Shown in pieces: positions 19,379 to 60,955 of a stretch of DNA of 64,000 bases (position 1 is the first letter of the stretch; the number at the start of each line of letters is the position of its first letter). The stretch is from the IMG/VR virus record IMGVR_UViG_3300024239_000014, positions 124,001 through 188,000 of that record. One strand, written 5' to 3'. The notes below the pieces were generated by a model that made no database searches, was not told the DNA's origin, and saw only the letters and a list, made by a program, of their open reading frames with translations. The position numbers were made by a program, and so were the translations under genes.

Positions 19379-21337
19379 TTACAAACGAACACCACCGCCA
19401 CGCTGACGCGGTTTGAAGTTAAACTGGTTCACCGAAGCCACCAGCTCCTGAGCGGAACCCGTCAACACTTCAGAGCCCTTCCCTACTTGTGTCAGGCTTT
19501 CAGCGTTGGCATCGGACATCGCATTGATGCGGTTCATGTTCCGGGTGATTTCTTCAGCCACATGAGCCTGCTCTTGAGCCGCAGTGGCAATCATGGTGGA
19601 TTGGTCGGCCATCTGACGGACATTGCTGACGATGTCAGACAGCGCGCCAGAAACCTGCACCGCGCCTTCTTTGGTATCCTGCACTGTTTGACGGACAGAA
19701 TCCACGGCACGAACCGCGTTATCAGTCACCTGCTGCAGGGCTTCCACTGTACCGCGAATGTCAGCGGTAGATTGCTGAGTCTTCGCAGCCAGGCTACGGA
19801 CTTCGTCAGCCACCACCGAGAACCCGCGACCCGCTTCACCGGCGCGCGCTGCTTCAATCGCAGCATTCAATGCCAGCAGGTTGGTCTGGTCGGCAATTTG
19901 ATTAATTGCCTCAGCCGCACGTCCAATGGACACCACCTGGTCCACCAGCAAGCGCATTGCAGCTTCAGTCTGCGTGATGTTTTCCACGCCGCGTTCTGAC
20001 CCACGTACCGTCTGCTTGACGATGACGGCAGCATCGTTTACCAGCTTCTCCACACTACCGGCTAAGGCGCATGAGGTTTCGGTATTACGAGCCACTTCCA
20101 GTACCGTCTGTTCCATCTCCGTGATGGCTGTGGCGGCGGATGCGATCTCCTGTGCGGCAGTCGATGTATTGGCAGCGGTCTGCGTGGCGATTGAGCGATT
20201 CTTCTCCGCCGTCACCTTCACTTGGTCGGCGACGTCCGACACTGTGGCCATCTGACGCCGCAGGCTGGCCAGCGTTTGGTTCAGCGACGCCTTGAGCTCC
20301 CCCAATTCAGCTTCAAACTCCGCATCCACATCCCAGAGGTCGCCGCGACTCACGCGTTGCAACTCTGCTTGAATTTTACCAAGTGGTGAGGTCACCTGGC
20401 GTTTCAGGACAGCGATGACTGTAAAGGCAACTGCTATCATGGCGACTACGAAAATACCGCCGAATAGCTTTACCAACAACCACCCTTGAGTGAAGAGTTC
20501 ACTGCCGACTTCAGCAGACACCAAGAGCCAGCCCAGACCTTCGAGTTCCGATTGCTGGTACTGGTAATCCGGTGACGTACCTTGTTTCCTGCGGACATCG
20601 TAAAACGGCGCTTCTTTCCCGACCCACTGTTTGTTCTTCAGGTCGTAAACGTAAATACCGCCAGACTTGCCAATCTTGACATTCGACAAGGTAGTTACCA
20701 AGTCGTTCAAGGATTGGGTAATGTCCTGGCCTACGAAGGTAGCACCGACCACGTTGCCGTAGGCGCTAATCGGGCTGTAGGAGACCACGTACGGCGTTCC
20801 GAACAAGTACGTGATACCCTGGTAGTTCTGATTCGCCAGAAGTGCAGGATAAGCCGGAGATTCACGGCTGAGCATGGTACCCACGACCCGTTTACCGGAA
20901 GTATCCTTCAAGCTGGTACTGATGCGGATAAAGTCATCGCCATCGCGGACCACCAAGGTGCTCACCACGGAATCATCCATGAGTTCACGGAAACGGTCGA
21001 CGTAGAATTCGTCATTATTCATCCGTTCGCCATTGACGGCCATGATGGGTGTTTGGACGCCGTTGACGTCTTCCTTGGTTGCTTGGTTGACAATAGCAGT
21101 GTCAATTTCGATGAAGTTCCTGAACAGGACCTCAATCTTCTTGGCGCTATTGGCCATGGAGAACTCGTAGGTCTTAATCAGGTCACGTGCCTGGTCTACG
21201 AGCTGTTGTTGGGCTCCATGGGTTTCTTCTTTGAGTGACGTTTCCGTCACCTGGTACGATACTGCGGCGATAGCGCCGAGTACCAGTATCAGCACAGGGA
21301 TGACCCGTGCCAGGATTTTACTGCTAATTTTAGTCAC
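19379..21337 (-). CDS. Methyl-accepting chemotaxis protein (TM-Cache-TM-HAMP-MCP signalling domain)
   Basis: TM1; Cache_3-Cache_2-type region VRDGDDFIRISTSLKD..G.RVVGT.L.RESPAY.AL; TM2; HAMP SPLGKI..EL..VSRGDL..ELGELKASLN; tip QTNLLALNAAIEAARAGEAGRGFSVVADEVRSLA. GTG start, RBS GGAGG. Confidence 0.95.
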   Translation of the reverse strand: MTKISSKILARVIPVLILVLGAIAAVSYQVTETSLKEETHGAQQQLVDQARDLIKTYEFSMANSAKKIEVLFRNFIEIDTAIVNQATKEDVNGVQTPIMAVNGERMNNDEFYVDRFRELMDDSVVSTLVVRDGDDFIRISTSLKDTSGKRVVGTMLSRESPAYPALLANQNYQGITYLFGTPYVVSYSPISAYGNVVGATFVGQDITQSLNDLVTTLSNVKIGKSGGIYVYDLKNKQWVGKEAPFYDVRRKQGTSPDYQYQQSELEGLGWLLVSAEVGSELFTQGWLLVKLFGGIFVVAMIAVAFTVIAVLKRQVTSPLGKIQAELQRVSRGDLWDVDAEFEAELGELKASLNQTLASLRRQMATVSDVADQVKVTAEKNRSIATQTAANTSTAAQEIASAATAITEMEQTVLEVARNTETSCALAGSVEKLVNDAAVIVKQTVRGSERGVENITQTEAAMRLLVDQVVSIGRAAEAINQIADQTNLLALNAAIEAARAGEAGRGFSVVADEVRSLAAKTQQSTADIRGTVEALQQVTDNAVRAVDSVRQTVQDTKEGAVQVSGALSDIVSNVRQMADQSTMIATAAQEQAHVAEEITRNMNRINAMSDANAESLTQVGKGSEVLTGSAQELVASVNQFNFKPRQRGGGVRL

Positions 21338-27912: not shown

Positions 27913-28209
27913 CACGCTGATCGGAAACTCGATCTTGCCTTGGTGGTTGTAATCGATCAACTCGATGTCCTCCCACTTGATGTCAAAGATCGACGTACCG
28001 ACCGGCACCTTGAGTCTCAAGCGCGGTCCTTCGGTCGGAGTGCGTGACAGCTGTTCTTCCACACCAGCAAACTGGTTGCTGTAGATGTGGACATCGCCGC
28101 CCGTCCAGATAAACTCACCAGGCGCATAACCGAGCTGGTTAGCGATCATGATGGTCAAAAGAGCATAGCTGGCGATGTTGAACGGCACACCGATTGGAAA
28201 ATCTGCACT
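27910..28209 (-). CDS. thyA: Thymidylate synthase exon 2
   Basis: SADFPIGVPFNIASY...GDVHIY; joins exon 1 in frame to give LYQR^SAD (spliced product 306 aa). Confidence 0.92.
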   Translation of the reverse strand, partial: SADFPIGVPFNIASYALLTIMIANQLGYAPGEFIWTGGDVHIYSNQFAGVEEQLSRTPTEGPRLRLKVPVGTSIFDIKWEDIELIDYNHQGKIEFPISV

Positions 28210-29310
28210 CAGATCTGTTCCTACGACTCGTGACGTCGCAGCGCACCATTACGTGCTGCCGGTATCACTACCGGTGTCGGTATACATCACAGTCTCCGTC
28301 CTTAGAGACTCTCTCCTGTTTCGGTTCCACTTAGAACCTACTCTACTCGCTTCTCGCTGTTAGTCCTGCGAGGCTTTCGATATACTCTGGGCATTAAGCG
28401 TAAGTCCAGTCTTTAAACCTTTCGCTTTTAGAAGCAATTCTGAAGACCACAGTTGCCGGACAAACGTCAAACTGCCGTGCTGCTTCAGTTACAGAATCGT
28501 AAACACATCCGTCGATTACGACTTTGCGTAGGTTAGTGGGCAAGATGCCTAATCTCTTCTCAGAAAGACGCTCTTTGGTTTCCTGACTGTGTTTTTTACC
28601 GAAGAAAGGATTTTTATCTCCTATCCGTAAAATACCCTTACGGCGGAGTTTTTCCTTCGTTTCTTCAGATAGTGATCTACCCTTACTCCAGGGTGTTCTA
28701 CCTATCCCGGCTAGTCTTAAAGCCTCGATAACGTGCTGAGGTCTTTTCTTACCGTAGTTATGGTTTAATGGACCACTCCTACCGTAGACTTTTCGCCGTT
28801 CTTCTTCGGTTAATGTTTTTGCGAAATCAAGTAGCCTATTTTTAGCTAATTCCTTGATCTCAGCACAGTCGGGATGGTTTGAGTAGGTATCGCCACCACT
28901 CGCACCATCTAGGATGTTGTACACGCTTTTGTTAGCTAGGCCTTCTTTAATGAGTTCTAGCTCGCGTGCTCTAGCATCCTCTTCGGTGGAAAATTGTGCT
29001 ACTTGGAGGATGTTCCAATCCGCCATGTTGCCAGTCCAATCATCCAGCATCTTTCTATTGTGGTGGGTTCCGTTAGCCAATTCCCTAAAATGTCTTTTTA
29101 TCCTTAGGGAAAAGTTTCCAGTACTACCGTAATAGGCTTTCTTCGTCCGCACGTTGTAAAGACAGTATACTTTATATTGCATGTAAACCTCTATTAAAAG
29201 GTAGTCCATACAATAAGTCGCTCTTAGCAACGGATAGCGTCTTTTCGACATTTCCCGTTTTAAGGAGAGTTATTCGACTAGGGTCACCCCTAGAAGGCGC
29301 AGTGTGGTTT
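28210..29310 (-). mobile_element. Group I intron (IA2-like), 1101 nt, in thyA
   Basis: U before the 5' splice site and terminal G. IGS CACUGCGC (29297-29304) pairs with junction GCGU|AGUG. P2 CUAGGG-GUGA-CCCUAG, P3 CUCUCCU/AGGAGAG, P4 AACGGG/UCCGUU, P7 GAGUAUA/UAUACC with bulged A, P7.2 GGUUC/GAACC, P8 AGUCUC/GAGACU, P9 hairpins. Confidence 0.92.
28394..29182 (-). CDS. Intron-encoded GIY-YIG homing endonuclease (262 aa)
   Basis: KVY..YYGST..F..R...H...L, E..LI, YNI; NUMOD3-type HNYGKK, FFGKKHSQETKERLS repeats; C-terminal HTH IDGCVYDSVTEAARQF; RBS GAGG; located in the P6 loop. Confidence 0.9.
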   Translation of the reverse strand: MQYKVYCLYNVRTKKAYYGSTGNFSLRIKRHFRELANGTHHNRKMLDDWTGNMADWNILQVAQFSTEEDARARELELIKEGLANKSVYNILDGASGGDTYSNHPDCAEIKELAKNRLLDFAKTLTEEERRKVYGRSGPLNHNYGKKRPQHVIEALRLAGIGRTPWSKGRSLSEETKEKLRRKGILRIGDKNPFFGKKHSQETKERLSEKRLGILPTNLRKVVIDGCVYDSVTEAARQFDVCPATVVFRIASKSERFKDWTYA

Positions 29311-29931
29311 ACGCTGATACAATTGGCAACTCAATCTCAGCGTCGGAATACCAGCCTCGTCCAACTCCTGCACGGTCGGCATGAAGTCTTCGTCTTTGTA
29401 CAGACGCCACTCCACCACCCGCTCTTCGTGGGTCATTTCTTCCACGATGAACTGGAACAGACAGTGGCACGGAGCCAGTGCCATATTGCCGTTGGCGACG
29501 TTCAGATGGGGAAGAATTGATTCGTCCGGCAGTTCAGCTGGATTCCAGGCAGTTACAACGTGCCGCCGCGAAAATGGTTTTTGATTCAGCTGGGTCAGCA
29601 GTTCCGTAATCTGGTCTACCCCGTTGAAATCGCGCCACTGGGCGCCGTAGATAGGACCAAGACGCCCTTCGGCATCTGCCCAGTCGTCCCAGATGTGGAC
29701 ACCCTTGGCGACTAATTCGTTGTTGTTAGTGCTACCGCGGAGGAACCAAAACAGTTCTTCTGCCAGGCCGCGGAGGAAAACCAGCTTCGTGGTCAGGAGC
29801 GGGAACCGTTGAGCAGACAGGTCAAAGCGCATCTGAGCACCGAAGACTGAACGAGTGCCGGTACCAGTACGGTCTTTCTTGTCGCGACCGGCGGTGTAGA
29901 TGTGGCGCATGAGTTCGAGGTATTGTTTCAT
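29311..29931 (-). CDS. thyA: Thymidylate synthase exon 1
   Basis: [40 protein letters not shown] (catalytic Cys), LYQR. Confidence 0.95.
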
Positions 29932-39209: not shown

Positions 39210-39384
39210 ATTTACCTACCAACACCCCGAAGGCGAGCTTGATGCGAAACCAAAGACCATCGAAACGGTGATTTACGGGACGGGCTGCACACCAGACGTC
39301 GTGCAACTCACCGTTCGCTGCCTTTCGTTTGTAGCACGTTTGCACCGACCAGTTCACCATTTCATCTGCGTTATACAGCGCCAT
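39136..39384 (-). CDS. Small phage protein (82 aa)
   Basis: W.AARP...RIKLAFGVLVGKYDALEW pattern; RBS GAGG. Confidence 0.65.
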   Translation of the reverse strand: MALYNADEMVNWSVQTCYKRKAANGELHDVWCAARPVNHRFDGLWFRIKLAFGVLVGKYDALEWVCDTPCRAPKVTTSADQA

Positions 39385-39586
39385 CGGCCTGCCCCTCTTC
39401 CTTGGTTTCGATCAGGTTGTTGACTTCGGTGATGCTGTAGTCGCAACCGCAGTACGCACAGCCATCAGGACACGTGGTGGATTCGGGCAACAACTCCTTC
39501 GAATACTCCAGACGATTCCCTTGAAAACCGTTGCAGTACTCGCACCAGCCATTGTAGAACTTGTCTACGCGATATACGTAAATCAT
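39371..39586 (-). CDS. Small Zn-finger protein (71 aa)
   Basis: CEYC and CPDGCAYC; RBS AAGGAG. Confidence 0.7.
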   Translation of the reverse strand: MIYVYRVDKFYNGWCEYCNGFQGNRLEYSKELLPESTTCPDGCAYCGCDYSITEVNNLIETKEEGQADGAV

Positions 39587-39674: not shown

Positions 39675-39737
39675 CAAAAAAAAATTCTACCGACGCACGT
39701 CTACCTACAGACCGGAGTCTGGGTTACATGCGTCGGA
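39675..39737 (-). terminator. Long two-tier hairpin with T-tract (terminator or sRNA 3' end)
   Basis: CCGACGCATGT/ACGTGCGTCGG outer stem, CAGAC-TCCG-GTCTG inner stem, then a T-run. Confidence 0.6.
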
Positions 39738-39750
39738 TTATAACGGCCTT

Positions 39751-39825
39751 TTACCGGGCCGGGACGGTCGGGTAGTCGCCCTGGCGTACAGGGTCTACCC
39801 GGCGGAGCACTTCATCCCACTCCAT
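39751..39825 (-). CDS. 24 aa micro-ORF MEWDEVLRRVDPVRQGDYPTVPAR (not in ORF track)
   Basis: Perfect SD AAGGAGGT 4 nt before the ATG. Confidence 0.55.
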   Translation of the reverse strand: MEWDEVLRRVDPVRQGDYPTVPAR

Positions 39826-39897: not shown

Positions 39898-40131
39898 TTA
39901 CGCCACGAGGTCGGTGTGCTCTTCCAGAGCTGCGAGTAGGTCAACCAACTTCATGTTGTAACCCACTTCGTTCCGCGTCCATACGGAAAAAACATAGCGC
40001 TCTTCCTCCACCAGCGCAACATCCGTATTCTCCGTCCCGTCTGGTGTGAACATCCGGGATGTCTGCAGGCGGAACAGGAAAGTCCAATCATCCTTGTCAA
40101 ACGTATCGGCGTTGGCTTTAGTGATCAACAT
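39898..40131 (-). CDS. Small acidic protein (77 aa)
   Basis: Start reassigned to MLITKA (RBS AGGAGG). Confidence 0.7.
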   Translation of the reverse strand: MLITKANADTFDKDDWTFLFRLQTSRMFTPDGTENTDVALVEEERYVFSVWTRNEVGYNMKLVDLLAALEEHTDLVA

Positions 40132-40277: not shown

Positions 40278-40577
40278 TTACTGGCGTTCGATCAGCATCG
40301 CAGTTACACCGATGGCCAGAATTTCTTCTGCGGTGTACTCACGGCCGAACTCCGTGCGACCCATGACTTTAAGGCTCAGAGCCTGGTCATAGCCGTCACA
40401 GACAGAACGATCAGCAGTCGGCTCAATCCCCAGAACCCGCACAGTGGAGTGACCCACGTAGTTCTTAGGATTGTGGGTTTTCACCCACTCCGCAGCTTCC
40501 TCGAGGGAAATGTAGCGCATGGTGTACGCACCTTCCTCGAGCAGCATCGGAGTCGACAGAATGACGTTTCGGGTCAT
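40278..40577 (-). CDS. acrIII-1: DUF1874 / AcrIII-1-like viral ring nuclease (99 aa)
   Basis: ILSTPMLLEEGAY..ISLEEA.EW, YVGH43ST, DR57, DQAL, GR74TEFGREYTAEEI; matches the STIV B116/YddF pattern from memory; RBS AAGGA. Confidence 0.72.
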   Translation of the reverse strand: MTRNVILSTPMLLEEGAYTMRYISLEEAAEWVKTHNPKNYVGHSTVRVLGIEPTADRSVCDGYDQALSLKVMGRTEFGREYTAEEILAIGVTAMLIERQ

Positions 40578-40661: not shown

Positions 40662-41159
40662 TTAGTGGAAAGATGATGGCCCGCGCGACACAAGCTCGCA
40701 GAACATGGTGAAGGCACCATCCTTGGAGAAGAAGATAGGAGAGATAATCTCCTTGATTTTCTCCCCCTTCTCGGTAATCTCGATAATCTCTTCATGCGAA
40801 GACCGGTAAGCGTCCATGCTCTCGAAAAAGGCCTTGAACTTCTCGGTTTCAACAACCGAGAGTTGACCGAGCACCCCACCGGCCAAGGCGGCGACCGCCG
40901 CCAGCTCGGCGTCCATGACAGGGATTGCCTGGAAGGCGATGCACGCCTCCAGGTTATCGGCCAACTCTGGGAACAACTCGCGAGAGCTGTTCACCCACAG
41001 CTTGGCTGCTTCCAAGTCAGAGCTGGTGTACACCAGCTCTTCTGGAACTACCAGCTCACCCATGAAGGGGGTGAGCTTGGCGACGGCGTCATCGCCGTAG
41101 GTGGCGGCGATGGCGGTACGGAGCGCGGCGATGGTGGTAGTGGTGTCGATAGTATTCAT
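40662..41159 (-). CDS. Acidic hypothetical protein (165 aa), paralogue of 41315..41794
   Basis: Start reassigned (RBS GAGGA); first gene after the promoter; visibly GC-richer codons. Confidence 0.7.
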   Translation of the reverse strand: MNTIDTTTTIAALRTAIAATYGDDAVAKLTPFMGELVVPEELVYTSSDLEAAKLWVNSSRELFPELADNLEACIAFQAIPVMDAELAAVAALAGGVLGQLSVVETEKFKAFFESMDAYRSSHEEIIEITEKGEKIKEIISPIFFSKDGAFTMFCELVSRGPSSFH

Positions 41160-41223
41160 GTCGTAATCCTCTTTTTTGTTCACGTTGTGGAAGCGAGTTT
41201 CCAGTGCACTCGAGCTTCCGGCT

Positions 41224-41239
41224 CACCTTAACGATATAG
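41224..41239 (-). promoter_or_regulatory. Putative early promoter heading the acrIII-1-like operon
   Basis: CTATATCGT-TAAG-GTG with an AT-rich upstream element. Confidence 0.65.
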
Positions 41240-41270: not shown

Positions 41271-41311
41271 AAAAAAAGAGGAGAGGGAAATCCCTCTCCT
41301 CCTATACCGTT
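41271..41311 (-). terminator. Motif-led hairpin with U-tract
   Basis: AACGGTATAG then a GAGGAGAGGGA/TCCCTCTCCTC stem and T7. Confidence 0.8.
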
Positions 41312-42912: not shown

Positions 42913-43167
42913 TTATTCAGCCAGTTCTACAGCTTCATTGGGGATGTGGACGAAGATCCACGATGGCTTTTCACCGCCAGCATATTTGTAGTCCTGGTAG
43001 TCGTAGTACATCTGCGTGAACTCAGGAGACTGAGCTGCTGCAGCTTCGATCTTCTTTTTGCTTTTTTGCCCTTCATTCCAAACACCGCTGCGATTGGACT
43101 TGATATAGTCCCAGTTGTGTTTGAGAAGGAGGGAAATAAACTCATTACGAGACAACCTGCGGGCCAT
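42913..43167 (-). CDS. Small phage protein (84 aa)
   Basis: HNWDY..S....W..G pattern; start reassigned (RBS AAGGAG). Confidence 0.7.
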   Translation of the reverse strand: MARRLSRNEFISLLLKHNWDYIKSNRSGVWNEGQKSKKKIEAAAAQSPEFTQMYYDYQDYKYAGGEKPSWIFVHIPNEAVELAE

Positions 43168-58897: not shown

Positions 58898-60955
58898 TCA
58901 GACCAGTACGGCGTATACACCTTCATCAAAGAAGGTTTCATTCAGGTAGAGTCGCTGACCACTCCAGTCCACCAGACAGACATCGGTGGCCGGAAGTCGG
59001 TCGTTGAAGGACCGCTTGAAGACCGAGTCGATGTACTCGTACAGGACACTGGTCGTAGCGCGGCTGATGATAGCCGGCTCAGTACCGCCGAGGTCGAGGT
59101 CGAGGTCTTCGGAGCTCATCGGCAACATAGCGACGTAATGCGTGTTGAGCATCACCACCGTATTGTCGATGAGCGCTTTGCGGTGTTCATCCGCCAGCTG
59201 TTCCTTACGCACCGCTGTCTGTGACTTGGAATCCTGGAGCACCACGGTGTGGTCTTTCACCAGGATACCGCTGTTGGTCAGCAGTTCCAGACTACCGGAA
59301 GTAAACCGCAGGTAGTGGGATTCCAAAGACGGGTCGGCCAGGATGGCAATTCGCTTGTACATGGTCTTCTGCGCCGCCAGGAACGCGTCAAAGAGTTCCG
59401 GATAGCTTTCGCGAATGTGTGCTGCCAACTCGGCCCAATCGGTCAAGAACGAATCGATGGTCAGACTCAAGCCCAGACCTGCAGTCACCGTTTCATTGAC
59501 CACTCGCGTAGCCAGCTGATTGAGCGTGTAGTGCAGTCGTTGGCTGTACGTGATGACTTCTTCGATCTGACGATGGATTTCTGTCATGGTGCACGCACCA
59601 GCACCGATGAACAGATTGGGACAGCTCTGGCGCAGGTGTTCACGATTGCTGACGATGAACGGCATTGCCGACACCGACGTGAATTCCAGCGGGACGTTCA
59701 TGTTGGGAACGCTGTGCAAAGCGCCGAGCATTTCCGTGGCCATGTCCAGGTCATCACAAACCACCACGGCTTCGAGCACTTTGGGCTCATTGACCACGAT
59801 TGCGTCGTTGACCTCTTCTTCAACAGACTCGTCGTCGACCAGCGGGGCAGTGCTGAGTTCGGTTTTCAAGAACACGCCTTCAGATGCAGGATTGATCTTT
59901 TGCAGGGCGAGGTTCAACTGATGTGCGTTGTAATCATTCATTGGCTTCTCCCGTATATTGCCATCTTCATCCAGGTAATGGGTTGTTCTGTGGAAACAAG
60001 GGCGAAGAGGAGAATCCCCTACGCGCCAGACGATAAGATCGGTGTTGGTTGACCGTTTCGGTACCGGCGCTGGTGTCGCTGCCGGGACGGGTGCTGGGGT
60101 GATTTCTTTGGTTGTGGAAGCAAACCCAGACATGAAGGTCTTGGTTTCCCCATGTTGGTTGACCGCTTCCGCACCATTATCACCCATGGTCAGTTCCATC
60201 CAATGGTCCTCGGTCGGACGACCCTTCGGCGGTTGACCGATTGAAAACGGCGCTGGAGCAACTGGAGCAGCGGGGGTGGGTGTCGCTTTAGGTACCACAC
60301 CCGGCGTACTCAAACGACCACCTACCATCCCACCCACGGGCGCTACCGGCACAGCGCTAACCGGTGCTGCCGTACCGCCGACCACAGGTGCCCACTGCAT
60401 CGTCTGCTGAGGCATCATGTTGCCAAACCCAGGTACCGCCGGAGCTGGAGTCATCATCGGTGCCATACCGACACCAGGTGTCTGAAACTGACGCTGACGC
60501 TGCAACATGTCAATCTGCTGCGCAATTGTCTCAGCCTGCTGTGCTGCAACCTGAACATCCTGTACCACCTGAGGCTGCACATAAGGCTGCAGCTGCGGGT
60601 ACTTCACCAGCTCACGATACATGTACATCTTCATCATGAGCGGACCTGCGGTCTGCAGCGCAGTCATCACGTCACGGACTTGCTGCGATGCCAACAGGAA
60701 TTCTGTCACCTCCAATGTAGCACGCACTGCACTGGCCCACATCTGGTTCATGTAGTTGTTTTGGCTGTACGTATTGAAGCTGTGAATGCCCAGATGATCG
60801 CCTGACTGGGCGTACTGCTGCAGTACAGTACGCATGATGGCTTCTGCCGCAGGCTGCCACTGGGCCTGGTGCTGCGGCAAGTTCTGGATTGGCACTACCT
60901 GACCCTGCTGGTTCATCGGGTCCTGGCGCCAGTAGGCGGTATTGATCTGGCTCAT
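58898..60955 (-). CDS. Core jumbo-phage protein with Q/P-rich N-terminal half (685 aa)
   Basis: ATGA-coupled to the RNAP subunit gene; low-complexity Q/P/A region followed by an acidic globular region. Confidence 0.75.
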   Translation of the reverse strand: MSQINTAYWRQDPMNQQGQVVPIQNLPQHQAQWQPAAEAIMRTVLQQYAQSGDHLGIHSFNTYSQNNYMNQMWASAVRATLEVTEFLLASQQVRDVMTALQTAGPLMMKMYMYRELVKYPQLQPYVQPQVVQDVQVAAQQAETIAQQIDMLQRQRQFQTPGVGMAPMMTPAPAVPGFGNMMPQQTMQWAPVVGGTAAPVSAVPVAPVGGMVGGRLSTPGVVPKATPTPAAPVAPAPFSIGQPPKGRPTEDHWMELTMGDNGAEAVNQHGETKTFMSGFASTTKEITPAPVPAATPAPVPKRSTNTDLIVWRVGDSPLRPCFHRTTHYLDEDGNIREKPMNDYNAHQLNLALQKINPASEGVFLKTELSTAPLVDDESVEEEVNDAIVVNEPKVLEAVVVCDDLDMATEMLGALHSVPNMNVPLEFTSVSAMPFIVSNREHLRQSCPNLFIGAGACTMTEIHRQIEEVITYSQRLHYTLNQLATRVVNETVTAGLGLSLTIDSFLTDWAELAAHIRESYPELFDAFLAAQKTMYKRIAILADPSLESHYLRFTSGSLELLTNSGILVKDHTVVLQDSKSQTAVRKEQLADEHRKALIDNTVVMLNTHYVAMLPMSSEDLDLDLGGTEPAIISRATTSVLYEYIDSVFKRSFNDRLPATDVCLVDWSGQRLYLNETFFDEGVYAVLV

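What the first reader, a model, noticed from the sequence alone, without database searches (positions are those of the whole stretch)
40278..40577. AcrIII-1-like ring nuclease in a nucleus-forming-type phage
Seen: a 99 aa protein with the DUF1874 layout, including GH43, R57, D.AL and R74..G78. It has two deviations from the pattern I recall: GH-S-T rather than GH-x-x-T, and RTEFG rather than RLxEG. It is the second gene after an early-type promoter. Known: AcrIII-1 (SIRV1 gp29, STIV B116, YddF) degrades cA4 using that His. Phage nuclei block DNA-targeting CRISPR but not RNA-sensing type III systems, including cA3-activated NucC. Inference: this closes the known gap in nucleus protection. The motif changes might shift specificity (cA3 or CBASS signals), and neighbouring genes may be further anti-defence factors.
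Basis: partly seen in the sequence, partly recalled or inferred. Interest (0 to 1): 0.85.

Follow-up and report, generated by a model that had tools for sequence, protein, structure and literature searches.

The report
AcrIII-1-family ring nuclease, jumbo phage
A 99-residue gene in an uncultured phiKZ-like giant phage belongs to the known viral family (DUF1874/AcrIII-1) that destroys the cyclic tetra-adenylate alarm signal of type III CRISPR. It is a divergent short form of that family, and I found no earlier report of the family in this kind of phage.

Summary

**Family.**
- Its own Pfam score is just below the cut-off (PF08960, 23.7 vs 26 bits).
- 10 of 11 close homologues hit PF08960.
- A family profile hits the solved structures AFV3-109, Csx1-Crn2, STIV B116 and SIRV1 gp29.
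- An AlphaFold model (pLDDT 94) matches only those structures (TM 0.6-0.77).

**Active site.** The catalytic His (H43) and both ligand arginines (R57, R74) are kept.

**Motif deviations.** This short form has GHxT after a 5-residue deletion, and R-x-E-F-G.

**Distribution.** The subfamily occurs in unrelated mobile elements: this phage lineage, a T7-like phage, a phage carrying Acb1/Acb2, and a conjugative-element-like region.

**Gene context.** It is the second gene of a small operon, after a terminator and a recurring AT-rich phage promoter motif.

**Host phage.** It is phiKZ-like (phiKZ capsid protein, non-virion RNA polymerase subunit, internal head proteins), but I could not locate chimallin.

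**Still inferred.** cA4 cleavage, anti-type-III function and any shift in specificity are untested. The neighbouring genes gave no anti-defence signal.

**Verdict:** a new member of a known kind, of moderate interest.

The parts
40278..40577 (-). 99-aa DUF1874/AcrIII-1-family protein (short-form subfamily). Predicted catalytic His is H43. Predicted ligand-binding residues are R57, R74, T45, S8 and K70. The lid loop is G73-Y81.
   Evidence: ORF. Pfam PF08960 at E 5.4e-5 over near full length. 10 of 11 homologues hit PF08960. The profile hits PDB 2j6b at 2.5e-10, Crn2 at 9e-6, B116 at 5e-4 and SIRV1 gp29 at 2.8e-3. AF2 model has pLDDT 94.2. The Foldseek top 17 PDB hits are all DUF1874 proteins.
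41276..41303 (-). Intrinsic terminator that ends the upstream transcription unit (12-bp stem with 7 G-C pairs, followed by a T run)
41221..41239 (-). Phage promoter-like motif CTATATC-N6-GTGAGC, preceded by 70% A+T. It is one of a recurring class, CTAYATY-N6-GTGRMC.
   Evidence: 7 matches in the window against 0.9 expected, and 0 of 100 shuffles reach 7. The layout resembles the AR9 early promoters (PMC5312081).
40662..41159 (-). Gene 1 of the operon, 165 aa from the ATG at 41159. It is an ORFan and is absent from the syntenic relative L004.
   Evidence: No Pfam or PHROG family. No match in L004.
39898..40131 (-). Gene 3, 77 aa, with an AGGAGG ribosome-binding site. It is the conserved downstream partner of the DUF1874 gene in this phage lineage. 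Function unknown.
   Evidence: Homologue directly downstream of the DUF1874 gene in L004, L005 and L006. Only 3 close homologues in the 5.8-billion set. AF2 pLDDT 57, not usable.
39751..39825 (-). Possible 24-codon ORF with a strong AAGGAGG ribosome-binding site, last in the operon. Read from sequence only.
39676..39736 (-). Probable terminator closing the operon: a long imperfect hairpin (CCGACGCA...TGCGTCGG) followed by T9. The next promoter-like motif follows at 39658-39640.
   Evidence: Read from sequence. The terminator scan did not list it because the loop is long.

Best explanation
The gene encodes a small homodimeric ring nuclease of the DUF1874 (AcrIII-1/Crn2) family.

**Proposed mechanism, by homology with SIRV1 gp29**
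1. Two subunits form a pocket at the dimer interface that binds cyclic tetra-adenylate (cA4).
2. A mobile loop (here G73-Y81, carrying R74) closes over the ligand.
3. H43 from each subunit acts as general acid. The ribose 2'-OH attacks the phosphodiester, and cA4 is cut into two A2>P halves without a metal.

**Proposed role.** The protein is made in the cytoplasm from a short operon behind a phage-specific, probably early, promoter. It would remove the second messenger that type III CRISPR (or another cA4-using system) produces on sensing phage mRNA, so that cA4-activated effectors stay off.

**Shown:** family membership, fold, conservation of the catalytic His and the two Arg, operon anatomy, spread across unrelated mobile elements, and the phiKZ-like genome.

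**Inferred:** dimerisation, substrate, catalysis, expression timing, anti-CRISPR effect, and phage nucleus formation.
For: **Family and fold**
- PF08960 matches over near full length, and 10 of 11 homologues hit it, best E 5.1e-9.
- The pure subfamily profile A1 hits AFV3-109 at E 0.0038.
- The 37-sequence profile A2 hits AFV3-109 at 2.5e-10, Csx1-Crn2 at 9.4e-6, STIV B116 at 5.3e-4 and SIRV1 gp29 at 2.8e-3.
- The AF2 model has pLDDT 94.2 and pTM 0.85.
- The 17 best Foldseek PDB matches are all DUF1874 proteins at probability 0.72-1.0 (16 of them at 0.98 or above), including the cA4 complexes 6scf and 8y7g. The next hit has probability 0.06.

**Active site**
- H43 aligns with SIRV1 H47 and with the Crn2 His that is mutated in the H495A structure 8y7g.
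- H47 is the residue whose loss costs more than 2500-fold in activity (10.1101/778746).
- R57 aligns with R66, and R74 with the lid residue R85.
- Other listed cA4 contacts map onto positions that are invariant in the close-homologue alignment A1, or at least 90% conserved there in the case of S8: I69 to C60, Q81 to K70, L92 to Y81, N8 to S8.
- The lowest model confidence (83) falls on residues 71-80, the equivalent of the mobile lid.

**Selection and mobility**
- dN/dS is about 0.40 against the relative L004. At 83% identity the gene is among the best-conserved in that region.
- It is the only gene shared with the flanks of loci from other elements. These are:
  - a T7-like phage, directly after the RNA polymerase pieces;
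  - a pRha phage;
  - a large phage where it lies 1.3 kb from an Acb2/Tad1-type gene and 8 kb from Acb1;
  - a conjugative-element-like region with a TraG/TraD coupling protein.
- This is the usual pattern for counter-defence cargo.

**Expression context:** a terminator plus a recurring AT-rich promoter motif, two genes upstream.
Against: - The window protein alone scores below Pfam's cut-off (23.7 vs 26 bits).
- Several ligand-contact positions differ from characterised enzymes: N8 to S, Q81 to K, E88 to F, and T shifted one residue closer to the His. The helix after the His is 5 residues shorter. No member of this short subfamily has been assayed, as far as the searchable literature shows.
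- In the one native-system study, the SIRV2 homologue had no anti-CRISPR effect during infection because it is expressed late, and it acted on a host methyltransferase instead (10.1101/2023.01.10.523387).
- Host and host defences are unknown.
- The documented type III response to a nucleus-forming phage uses cA3 and NucC, not cA4.
- Dimer and ligand docking could not be modelled here.
Confidence: 0.6

Rival explanations
1. It is a ring nuclease of the same fold and chemistry but with a different substrate. Candidates are cA3, cA6 or a CBASS-type cyclic trinucleotide. The subfamily-specific changes around the pocket would have retuned ligand recognition.
For: - Subfamily-wide changes sit at ligand-contact positions, alongside a shortened helix next to the catalytic His.
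- C60, K70, E80 and Y81 are invariant in the close-homologue alignment A1 and are replaced by other residues in the canonical members in alignment A6.
- In one phage (L001) the homologue lies near Acb2/Tad1-type and Acb1 genes, which act on CBASS/Thoeris-type signals.
- The known type III response to nucleus-forming phages uses cA3.
Against: - All characterised DUF1874 enzymes are cA4-specific, and ring nucleases associate only with cA4 effectors in genome surveys (10.1101/2024.09.24.614671; 10.1101/778746).
- A two-fold symmetric dimer suits cA4 (or cA2/cA6), not the three-fold cA3.
- H43, R57 and R74 are unchanged.
- Proximity to Acb genes is seen in only one locus.
Confidence: 0.15
2. It keeps the fold but acts mainly without catalysis in vivo. 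It could work as a cyclic-nucleotide sponge, or bind and inhibit a host protein as SIRV2 gp37 does with a lysine methyltransferase.
For: - The native-system study of SIRV2 gp37 found a protein-protein role and no anti-CRISPR effect during infection.
- At least one subfamily member (P0030) has Tyr in place of the His.
- Fused, longer forms exist whose extra domains have no family match.
Against: - His43 is at least 90% conserved across 37 diverse members, and T45, R57 and R74 are conserved too. That conservation is hard to explain without catalysis or ligand binding.
- The methyltransferase partner is a crenarchaeal protein, and this subfamily is bacterial and phage-borne.
Confidence: 0.12
3. 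It is a small DNA-binding or regulatory protein, the older annotation of B116 and AFV3-109 homologues.
For: Several database records still name homologues 'DNA binding protein'.
Against: That annotation predates the demonstration of cA4 ring-nuclease activity with co-crystal structures. The conserved residues here are those of the nucleotide pocket.
Confidence: 0.04

Closest known systems
AcrIII-1 (SIRV1 gp29; PDB 2x4i, 6scf) and its homologues STIV B116 (2j85) and AFV3-109 (2j6b)
   Same: - Same fold: TM 0.6-0.77, Foldseek probability 1.0.
- Profile homology: 2.5e-10 to AFV3-109.
- The catalytic His (H47/H43), R66/R57 and the lid R85/R74 are aligned.
- It is a small stand-alone viral protein.
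   Different: - 15-24% identity, and shorter (99 vs 109-122 aa).
- A 5-residue deletion in the helix after the His and a 2-residue deletion after C60.
- An 8-residue beta-hairpin insertion relative to SIRV1 gp29 near the N-terminus.
- N8 to S, Q81 to K, E88 to F.
- It is a bacterial jumbo-phage gene rather than a crenarchaeal virus gene.
- Its activity is untested.
Crn2 domain of Marinitoga Csx1-Crn2 (PDB 8y6z, 8y7f, 8y7g)
   Same: - Best TM-score of all matches (0.77).
- Profile E 9.4e-6.
- The GH motif aligns with the His mutated in the H495A-cA4 complex.
   Different: - Crn2 is a cellular, CRISPR-locus-encoded domain fused to a Csx1 effector, and it limits the cell's own signal.
- This protein is stand-alone and carried on mobile elements.
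- Crn2 has the canonical R-P-E-E-G and the long helix.
Phage-borne DUF1874 proteins of cultured phages (Thermoanaerobacterium phage THSA-485A; Fusobacterium phages such as Fnu1; Vibrio phage Rostov 7)
   Same: - Bacteriophage-encoded members of the family.
- The THSA-485A protein blocked cA4-dependent type III immunity and matches the model in BFVD (E 3.3e-3).
   Different: - These are canonical long forms.
- The window protein finds none of them by tblastn.
- The 53 phage or archaeal-virus records that hold a canonical homologue include no phiKZ-like phage in the organism counts shown.
- The published survey found AcrIII-1 in only 36 of 28,114 phage genomes.

Membership tests
DUF1874 / AcrIII-1 / Crn2 ring nucleases (Pfam PF08960) | Significant sequence-profile match to the family over the whole domain | tested here: met
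   - The single sequence is sub-threshold: 23.7 bits against a cut-off of 26, E 5.4e-5, covering 11-98 of 101 profile positions.
- 10 of 11 close homologues match, best 5.1e-9.
- Profile A1 hits 2j6b at 0.0038.
- Profile A2 hits 2j6b at 2.5e-10, Crn2 at 9.4e-6, B116 at 5.3e-4 and gp29 at 2.8e-3.
- A2 contains two canonical members, which helps it reach those structures.
DUF1874 / AcrIII-1 / Crn2 ring nucleases (Pfam PF08960) | The family's fold | tested here: met
   AF2 pLDDT is 94.2. The top 17 Foldseek PDB hits are all family members, with TMq 0.54-0.77. The next hit has probability 0.06. BFVD hits include STIV B116 and the THSA-485A protein.
DUF1874 / AcrIII-1 / Crn2 ring nucleases (Pfam PF08960) | Absolutely conserved catalytic histidine (SIRV1 gp29 H47) at the start of helix 2 | tested here: met
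   H43 aligns with H47 and with the Crn2 catalytic His. It is at least 90% conserved in 37 subfamily members. It lies just before helix 44-49 in the model.
DUF1874 / AcrIII-1 / Crn2 ring nucleases (Pfam PF08960) | cA4-contacting side chains (SIRV1 N8, S11, N13, S49, T50, R66, Q81, R85) | tested here: inconclusive
   - R66 to R57 and R85 to R74 are kept and invariant.
- S49/T50 correspond to S44/T45, with a one-residue shift.
- N8 becomes S8 and Q81 becomes K70.
- S11 and N13 cannot be aligned reliably because of an insertion.
DUF1874 / AcrIII-1 / Crn2 ring nucleases (Pfam PF08960) | Homodimer with the ligand pocket at the interface and a closing lid loop | not testable with these tools
   Only monomer prediction is available. 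The loop equivalent to the lid (residues 71-80) has the lowest pLDDT (83) in the model, which is only suggestive.
DUF1874 / AcrIII-1 / Crn2 ring nucleases (Pfam PF08960) | Metal-independent cleavage of cA4 to A2>P, and inhibition of cA4-dependent type III immunity | not testable with these tools
   This needs biochemistry and a plasmid- or phage-challenge assay.
Nucleus-forming phiKZ-like jumbo phages (Chimalliviridae) - the genomic context claimed | phiKZ-type structural and transcription hallmark genes | tested here: met
   - Three ORFs match phiKZ internal head proteins, PF12699; two are above its cut-off and the third (908-2188) scores 26.8 against 27 bits.
- The 717-aa and 973-aa virion proteins have homologues in 290 phiKZ-like records at under 41% identity.
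- A 545-aa homologue of the non-virion RNA polymerase subunit matches in 284 records.
- A PhiKZ_MCP (PF25620) gene lies 2.4 kb past the window end on the same 249,640-bp contig.
Nucleus-forming phiKZ-like jumbo phages (Chimalliviridae) - the genomic context claimed | Chimallin (nuclear shell protein, PF25677) | tested here: inconclusive
   - None is present in the window plus 8.6 kb: the ten largest ORFs have no PF25677 hit, and hmmsearch with four chimallin profiles found nothing.
- About 177 kb of the source contig could not be read.
- One protein search and four pattern scans for chimallin or its conserved RNA polymerase neighbour returned other contigs, not this one.

The most novel reading that the evidence does not exclude
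The short-form subfamily is a ring nuclease with a new substrate range that includes cA3. Its distinguishing features are a 5-residue deletion next to the catalytic His, Ser for Asn8, Lys for Gln81 and Phe for Glu88. On this reading, phiKZ-like phages carry it specifically to disarm the cA3/NucC-type abortive response, which is the one CRISPR route known to reach nucleus-forming phages.
Probability: 0.1. Interest if true: 0.8.

Novelty: new member of a known kind. Interest (0 to 1): 0.45.

Why it matters
The phage nucleus shields DNA from restriction enzymes and DNA-targeting CRISPR. RNA-sensing type III systems still detect exported mRNA and kill the cell through cyclic-oligoadenylate signalling (10.1101/2022.06.20.496707). 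A signal-degrading enzyme in a phiKZ-like phage would be the logical counter-move.

I found no paper in the searchable library linking AcrIII-1 to these phages. No homologue was detected in the phiKZ-like phages among 50,697 sequenced phage records.

If it is active, this would show that giant phages layer a soluble anti-signalling enzyme on top of the physical barrier. It would also add a compact (99 aa), uncharacterised branch to the ring-nuclease family for specificity studies.

The limits are real. The phage is uncultured, its host is unknown, and the enzyme class itself is already well understood.

Tried and rejected
1. **Direct look-ups for the window protein.** tblastn and megablast against 50,697 phage records found no match. 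phmmer against PDB gave only a chance CheX hit at E 1.5. NCBIfam has no model for it.
2. **Locating chimallin on the source contig.**
   - A protein search with phiKZ gp54 reached only relatives of 37% identity or more.
   - Three pattern scans of viral contigs with chimallin alignments returned 22, 15 and 34 loci.
   - One scan with the conserved neighbouring RNA polymerase subunit returned 72 loci.
   - None of these returned IMGVR_UViG_3300024239_000014.
   - Two alignments were too diverse to search with.
   - Extending the contig by 8.6 kb and running hmmsearch locally found no chimallin.
   - The result neither shows nor excludes a nucleus.
3. **Function of the neighbouring genes.** Pfam and PHROGs gave nothing for 10 flanking ORFs. 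The conserved downstream 77-aa partner has only 3 close homologues. Its model reached pLDDT 57, so I did not run a fold search on it.
4. **Fused, longer subfamily members.** They were scanned for informative extra domains, and none was found.
5. **Rfam.** The window scan and the scan of the thyA insertion gave no hits.
6. **Chance ORF or pseudogene.** Rejected on the homologues, the dN/dS value and the ribosome-binding site.
7. **Cellular Crn2-type regulator.** Rejected because no locus examined is next to CRISPR-cas genes. All of them are mobile-element contexts.

Full report
**1. What is at the coordinates**

The interval 40278-40577 holds one ATG-started ORF of 99 codons on the minus strand. 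A purine-rich ribosome-binding site lies four bases before the start.

The ORF is not a chance reading frame.
- It has 11 homologues at E <= 2.5e-21 in the 5.8-billion-protein collection.
- It has 59 cluster representatives at E <= 1e-3 in the 1.84-billion-protein library.
- The copy in a syntenic relative is 83% identical in protein and 85% in DNA, with dN/dS about 0.40.

**2. Family assignment**

Sequence evidence:
- Alone, the protein matches Pfam PF08960 (STIV_B116-like, formerly DUF1874) over nearly the whole model, but just under the curated cut-off: 23.7 vs 26 bits, E 5.4e-5.
- Ten of its eleven close homologues match the same family, best E 5.1e-9.
- A profile of the 11 close homologues finds the solved structure AFV3-109 at E 0.0038.
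- A 37-sequence profile finds AFV3-109 (2.5e-10), the Crn2 domain of Marinitoga Csx1-Crn2 (9.4e-6), STIV B116 (5.3e-4) and SIRV1 gp29 (2.8e-3). That profile includes two canonical members.

Structure evidence:
- An AlphaFold2 model built on the 37-sequence alignment has pLDDT 94.2 and pTM 0.85.
- Its 17 best Foldseek matches in the PDB are exclusively these proteins, including the cA4 complexes 6scf and 8y7g.
- They have TM-scores of 0.54-0.77 and probability 0.72-1.0, with 16 of the 17 at 0.98 or above. The eighteenth hit has probability 0.06.
- In the viral structure library the model matches STIV B116 and the Thermoanaerobacterium phage THSA-485A protein, which was shown to block cA4-dependent immunity.

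Membership in the DUF1874/AcrIII-1/Crn2 family is therefore well supported by both sequence profile and fold.

**3. Active-site residues**

I took SIRV1 gp29 from its genome record and aligned it with the window protein and bridging sequences. The residues that the AcrIII-1 paper lists as catalytic or ligand-contacting (10.1101/778746) map as follows.

| SIRV1 gp29 residue | Window protein | Comment |
|---|---|---|
| H47 (general acid; H47A loses more than 2500-fold) | H43 | Also aligns with the Crn2 His mutated in 8y7g; at least 90% conserved in the subfamily |
| R66 | R57 | Invariant in close homologues |
| R85 (lid "lock") | R74 | Invariant in close homologues |
| S49/T50 | S44/T45 | Displaced by one position |
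| N8 | S8 | |
| Q81 | K70 | |
| I69 (main-chain contact) | C60 | Invariant in close homologues |
| L92 (main-chain contact) | Y81 | Invariant in close homologues |
| S11, N13 | not placed | The window protein has an 8-residue insertion there |

The part of the model with the lowest confidence (residues 71-80, mean 83) is the counterpart of the mobile lid.

The catalytic core is kept, and part of the ligand shell is changed.

**4. The two "deviations" define a subfamily**

All 35 non-canonical sequences in the 37-sequence alignment share two deletions. One removes 5 residues from the helix after G-H-x-T. The other removes 2 residues after the conserved Cys. Most also read G-R-[LV]-E-F-G where canonical members read R-[LP]-x-E-G.

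The window copy has Thr at the second position of that motif, and P0061 shares it.

The subfamily is small: 59 representatives at 50% clustering in 1.84 billion proteins. It is absent from the 50,697 sequenced phage records at tblastn sensitivity.

I found no assay of any member in the searchable literature.

**5. Operon and signals**

Reading the minus strand, the elements run in this order:
1. A strong intrinsic terminator (41303-41276).
2. A 70% A+T stretch and the motif CTATATC-N6-GTGAGC (41239-41221).
3. Gene 1 (41159-40662, 165 aa).
4. The DUF1874 gene.
5. Gene 3 (40131-39898, 77 aa).
6. A possible 24-codon ORF (39825-39751).
7. A long hairpin followed by T9 (39736-39676).
8. The same motif again (39658-39640).

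The motif CTAYATY-N6-GTGRMC occurs 7 times in the window against 0.9 expected, and no shuffle out of 100 reached 7. Five sites have AT-rich upstream DNA, and four of them directly follow terminators.

Its layout resembles the AR9 early (virion RNA polymerase) promoter, TATATTAT-N6-G (PMC5312081). It also fits the AT-rich early promoters described for phiKZ (PMC10914365).

"Second gene after a phage promoter" is therefore shown. "Early" is an analogy only. Timing matters, because the SIRV2 homologue failed as an anti-CRISPR in native infection precisely because it is expressed late.

**6. Genome context**

The window is positions 124,001-188,000 of a 249,640-bp metagenomic viral contig (IMG/VR UViG 3300024239_000014).

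Evidence that it is phiKZ-like:
- Three ORFs match the phiKZ internal head protein family; two are above Pfam's cut-off and the third (908-2188) scores 26.8 against 27 bits.
- The virion proteins have homologues in about 290 phiKZ-like jumbo phage records, all below 41% identity. The nearest are Xanthomonas RTH11 and LucasX, Klebsiella Eowyn, Goslar and PhiPA3.
- It has a homologue of the non-virion RNA polymerase subunit.
- A phiKZ-type major capsid gene lies 2.4 kb beyond the window.

It is thus a deep-branching phiKZ-like phage.

Chimallin, the defining nuclear-shell protein, is not in the window or the next 8.6 kb. I could not reach the rest of the contig. One protein search and four pattern scans returned many other jumbo-phage contigs but not this one. 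Nucleus formation is therefore inferred from family resemblance, not shown.

**7. Distribution of the gene**

- A syntenic relative (L004, a 139.6-kb contig) keeps the DUF1874 gene together with the 77-aa downstream partner, while the surrounding small genes differ.
- Elsewhere the gene is the only thing shared with the window.
- It occurs in a roughly 120-kb phage contig, 1.3 kb from an Acb2/Tad1-hairpin gene and 8 kb from Acb1.
- It occurs in a T7-like phage, right after the RNA polymerase pieces.
- It occurs in a phage with a pRha regulator.
- It occurs in a Thermodesulfobacteriota chromosome, beside a TraG/TraD coupling protein, a DUF6094 methyltransferase and an SNF2 helicase, which looks like an integrative conjugative element.
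- No locus examined is next to cas genes.

This is the signature of mobile counter-defence cargo rather than of a cellular Crn2-type regulator.

**8. Mechanism proposed, and how sure**

By homology, the protein most likely dimerises and binds cA4 at the interface. The R74 loop closes, and H43 protonates the leaving group while the 2'-OH attacks. The products are A2>P, and cA4-activated effectors are silenced.

My estimates are:

| Claim | Estimated probability |
|---|---|
| Family membership | about 0.97 |
| An active cyclic-oligoadenylate nuclease | about 0.7 |
| cA4 as the main substrate, with an anti-type-III role in nature | about 0.6 |

Rivals:
- The same chemistry with a retuned substrate (0.15).
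- A mainly non-catalytic role such as sponging or inhibiting a host protein (0.12).
- The old "DNA-binding" label (0.04).

However, a two-fold symmetric pocket and the strict cA4 association of all known ring nucleases argue against it.

**9. Comparison with what is known, and novelty**

AcrIII-1 is a well-characterised family. It is already known in some tailed phages: 36 of 28,114 genomes in one survey, and 53 records by my tblastn, none from a phiKZ-like phage in the organism counts shown.

What is new is the host genome type and the uncharacterised short-form branch. I found no paper joining AcrIII-1 with Chimalliviridae or with nucleus-forming phages beyond shared reference lists.

I therefore rate it a new member of a known kind, with moderate interest (0.45). 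The idea fits the known weakness of the phage nucleus and is easy to test in vitro. But the enzyme class is understood, the phage is uncultured, the host is unknown, and nothing about activity or specificity is yet shown.

**10. The neighbours**

The claim that adjacent genes are further anti-defence factors has no support so far. Ten flanking ORFs have no Pfam or PHROG family of known function. The conserved 77-aa partner is lineage-restricted, and its model is too poor to compare.

Noticed in passing
window 19379-21337 (-): A 652-aa chemoreceptor-like ORF (Cache_3-Cache_2 sensor, HAMP, MCP signalling domain) sits inside a phiKZ-like phage genome. It is the second gene after a promoter-like motif at 22076-22058. 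It is probably host-derived and could hint at the host.
   Followed up: partly
window 27913-29931 (-): The thymidylate synthase gene is split. Pieces at 29931-29311 and 28209-27913 match the uninterrupted ThyA of relative L004. They are separated by about 1.1 kb that encodes a GIY-YIG/NUMOD3/I-TevI-type homing endonuclease (28394-29251). The arrangement resembles the T4 td intron, but Rfam found no group I intron.
   Followed up: partly
window 6156-6138, 22076-22058, 34074-34056, 39658-39640, 41239-41221, 43512-43494 (all -): A recurring phage promoter-like motif, CTAYATY-N6-GTGRMC, gives 7 hits against 0.9 expected (the seventh, on the plus strand at 42933-42951, lacks the AT-rich context). 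Five sites have AT-rich upstream DNA, and four of them lie directly after intrinsic terminators. This delimits a block of short operons of small ORFan genes between about 30 and 44 kb.
   Followed up: partly
L001 11653-11931 and 18166-18690: In an unrelated phage contig of about 120 kb, the DUF1874 homologue lies 1.3 kb from an Acb2/Tad1-hairpin gene and 8 kb from an Acb1 gene. This may be a cluster of anti-signalling genes. A TnpB/IS605 OrfB gene is also nearby.
   Followed up: no
window 58898-60955 (-): A 685-aa ORF sits between the non-virion RNA polymerase subunit and conserved virion genes. It has no tblastn match in 50,697 phage records and only weak N-terminal PHROG hits.
   Followed up: partly
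window 39371-39586 (-); L004 9700-9918: A Cys-rich 71-aa ORF (zinc-ribbon-like spacing of cysteines) lies directly upstream of the DUF1874 gene in relatives L004-L006. In the window it lies in the next operon downstream, which indicates a local rearrangement.
   Followed up: no
L051 9485-10303; proteins P0013, P0027: Some subfamily members are C-terminal domains of proteins 225-281 aa long. Their N-terminal parts match no Pfam family.
   Followed up: partly
BFVD entries J7KCD4, A0A1B2IEJ3, A0A1B2IEC3: The model gives weak fold matches (probability 0.66-0.96, 8-10% identity) to 133-145-aa proteins of the Erwinia jumbo phages phiEaH2 and Kwan. These may be very remote DUF1874-like proteins in other giant phages.
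   Followed up: no
L143 (IMGVR_UViG_3300024239_000016): The same metagenome sample holds a second jumbo-phage contig of 194 kb. It carries the gp55-like RNA polymerase subunit that normally follows chimallin.
   Followed up: no
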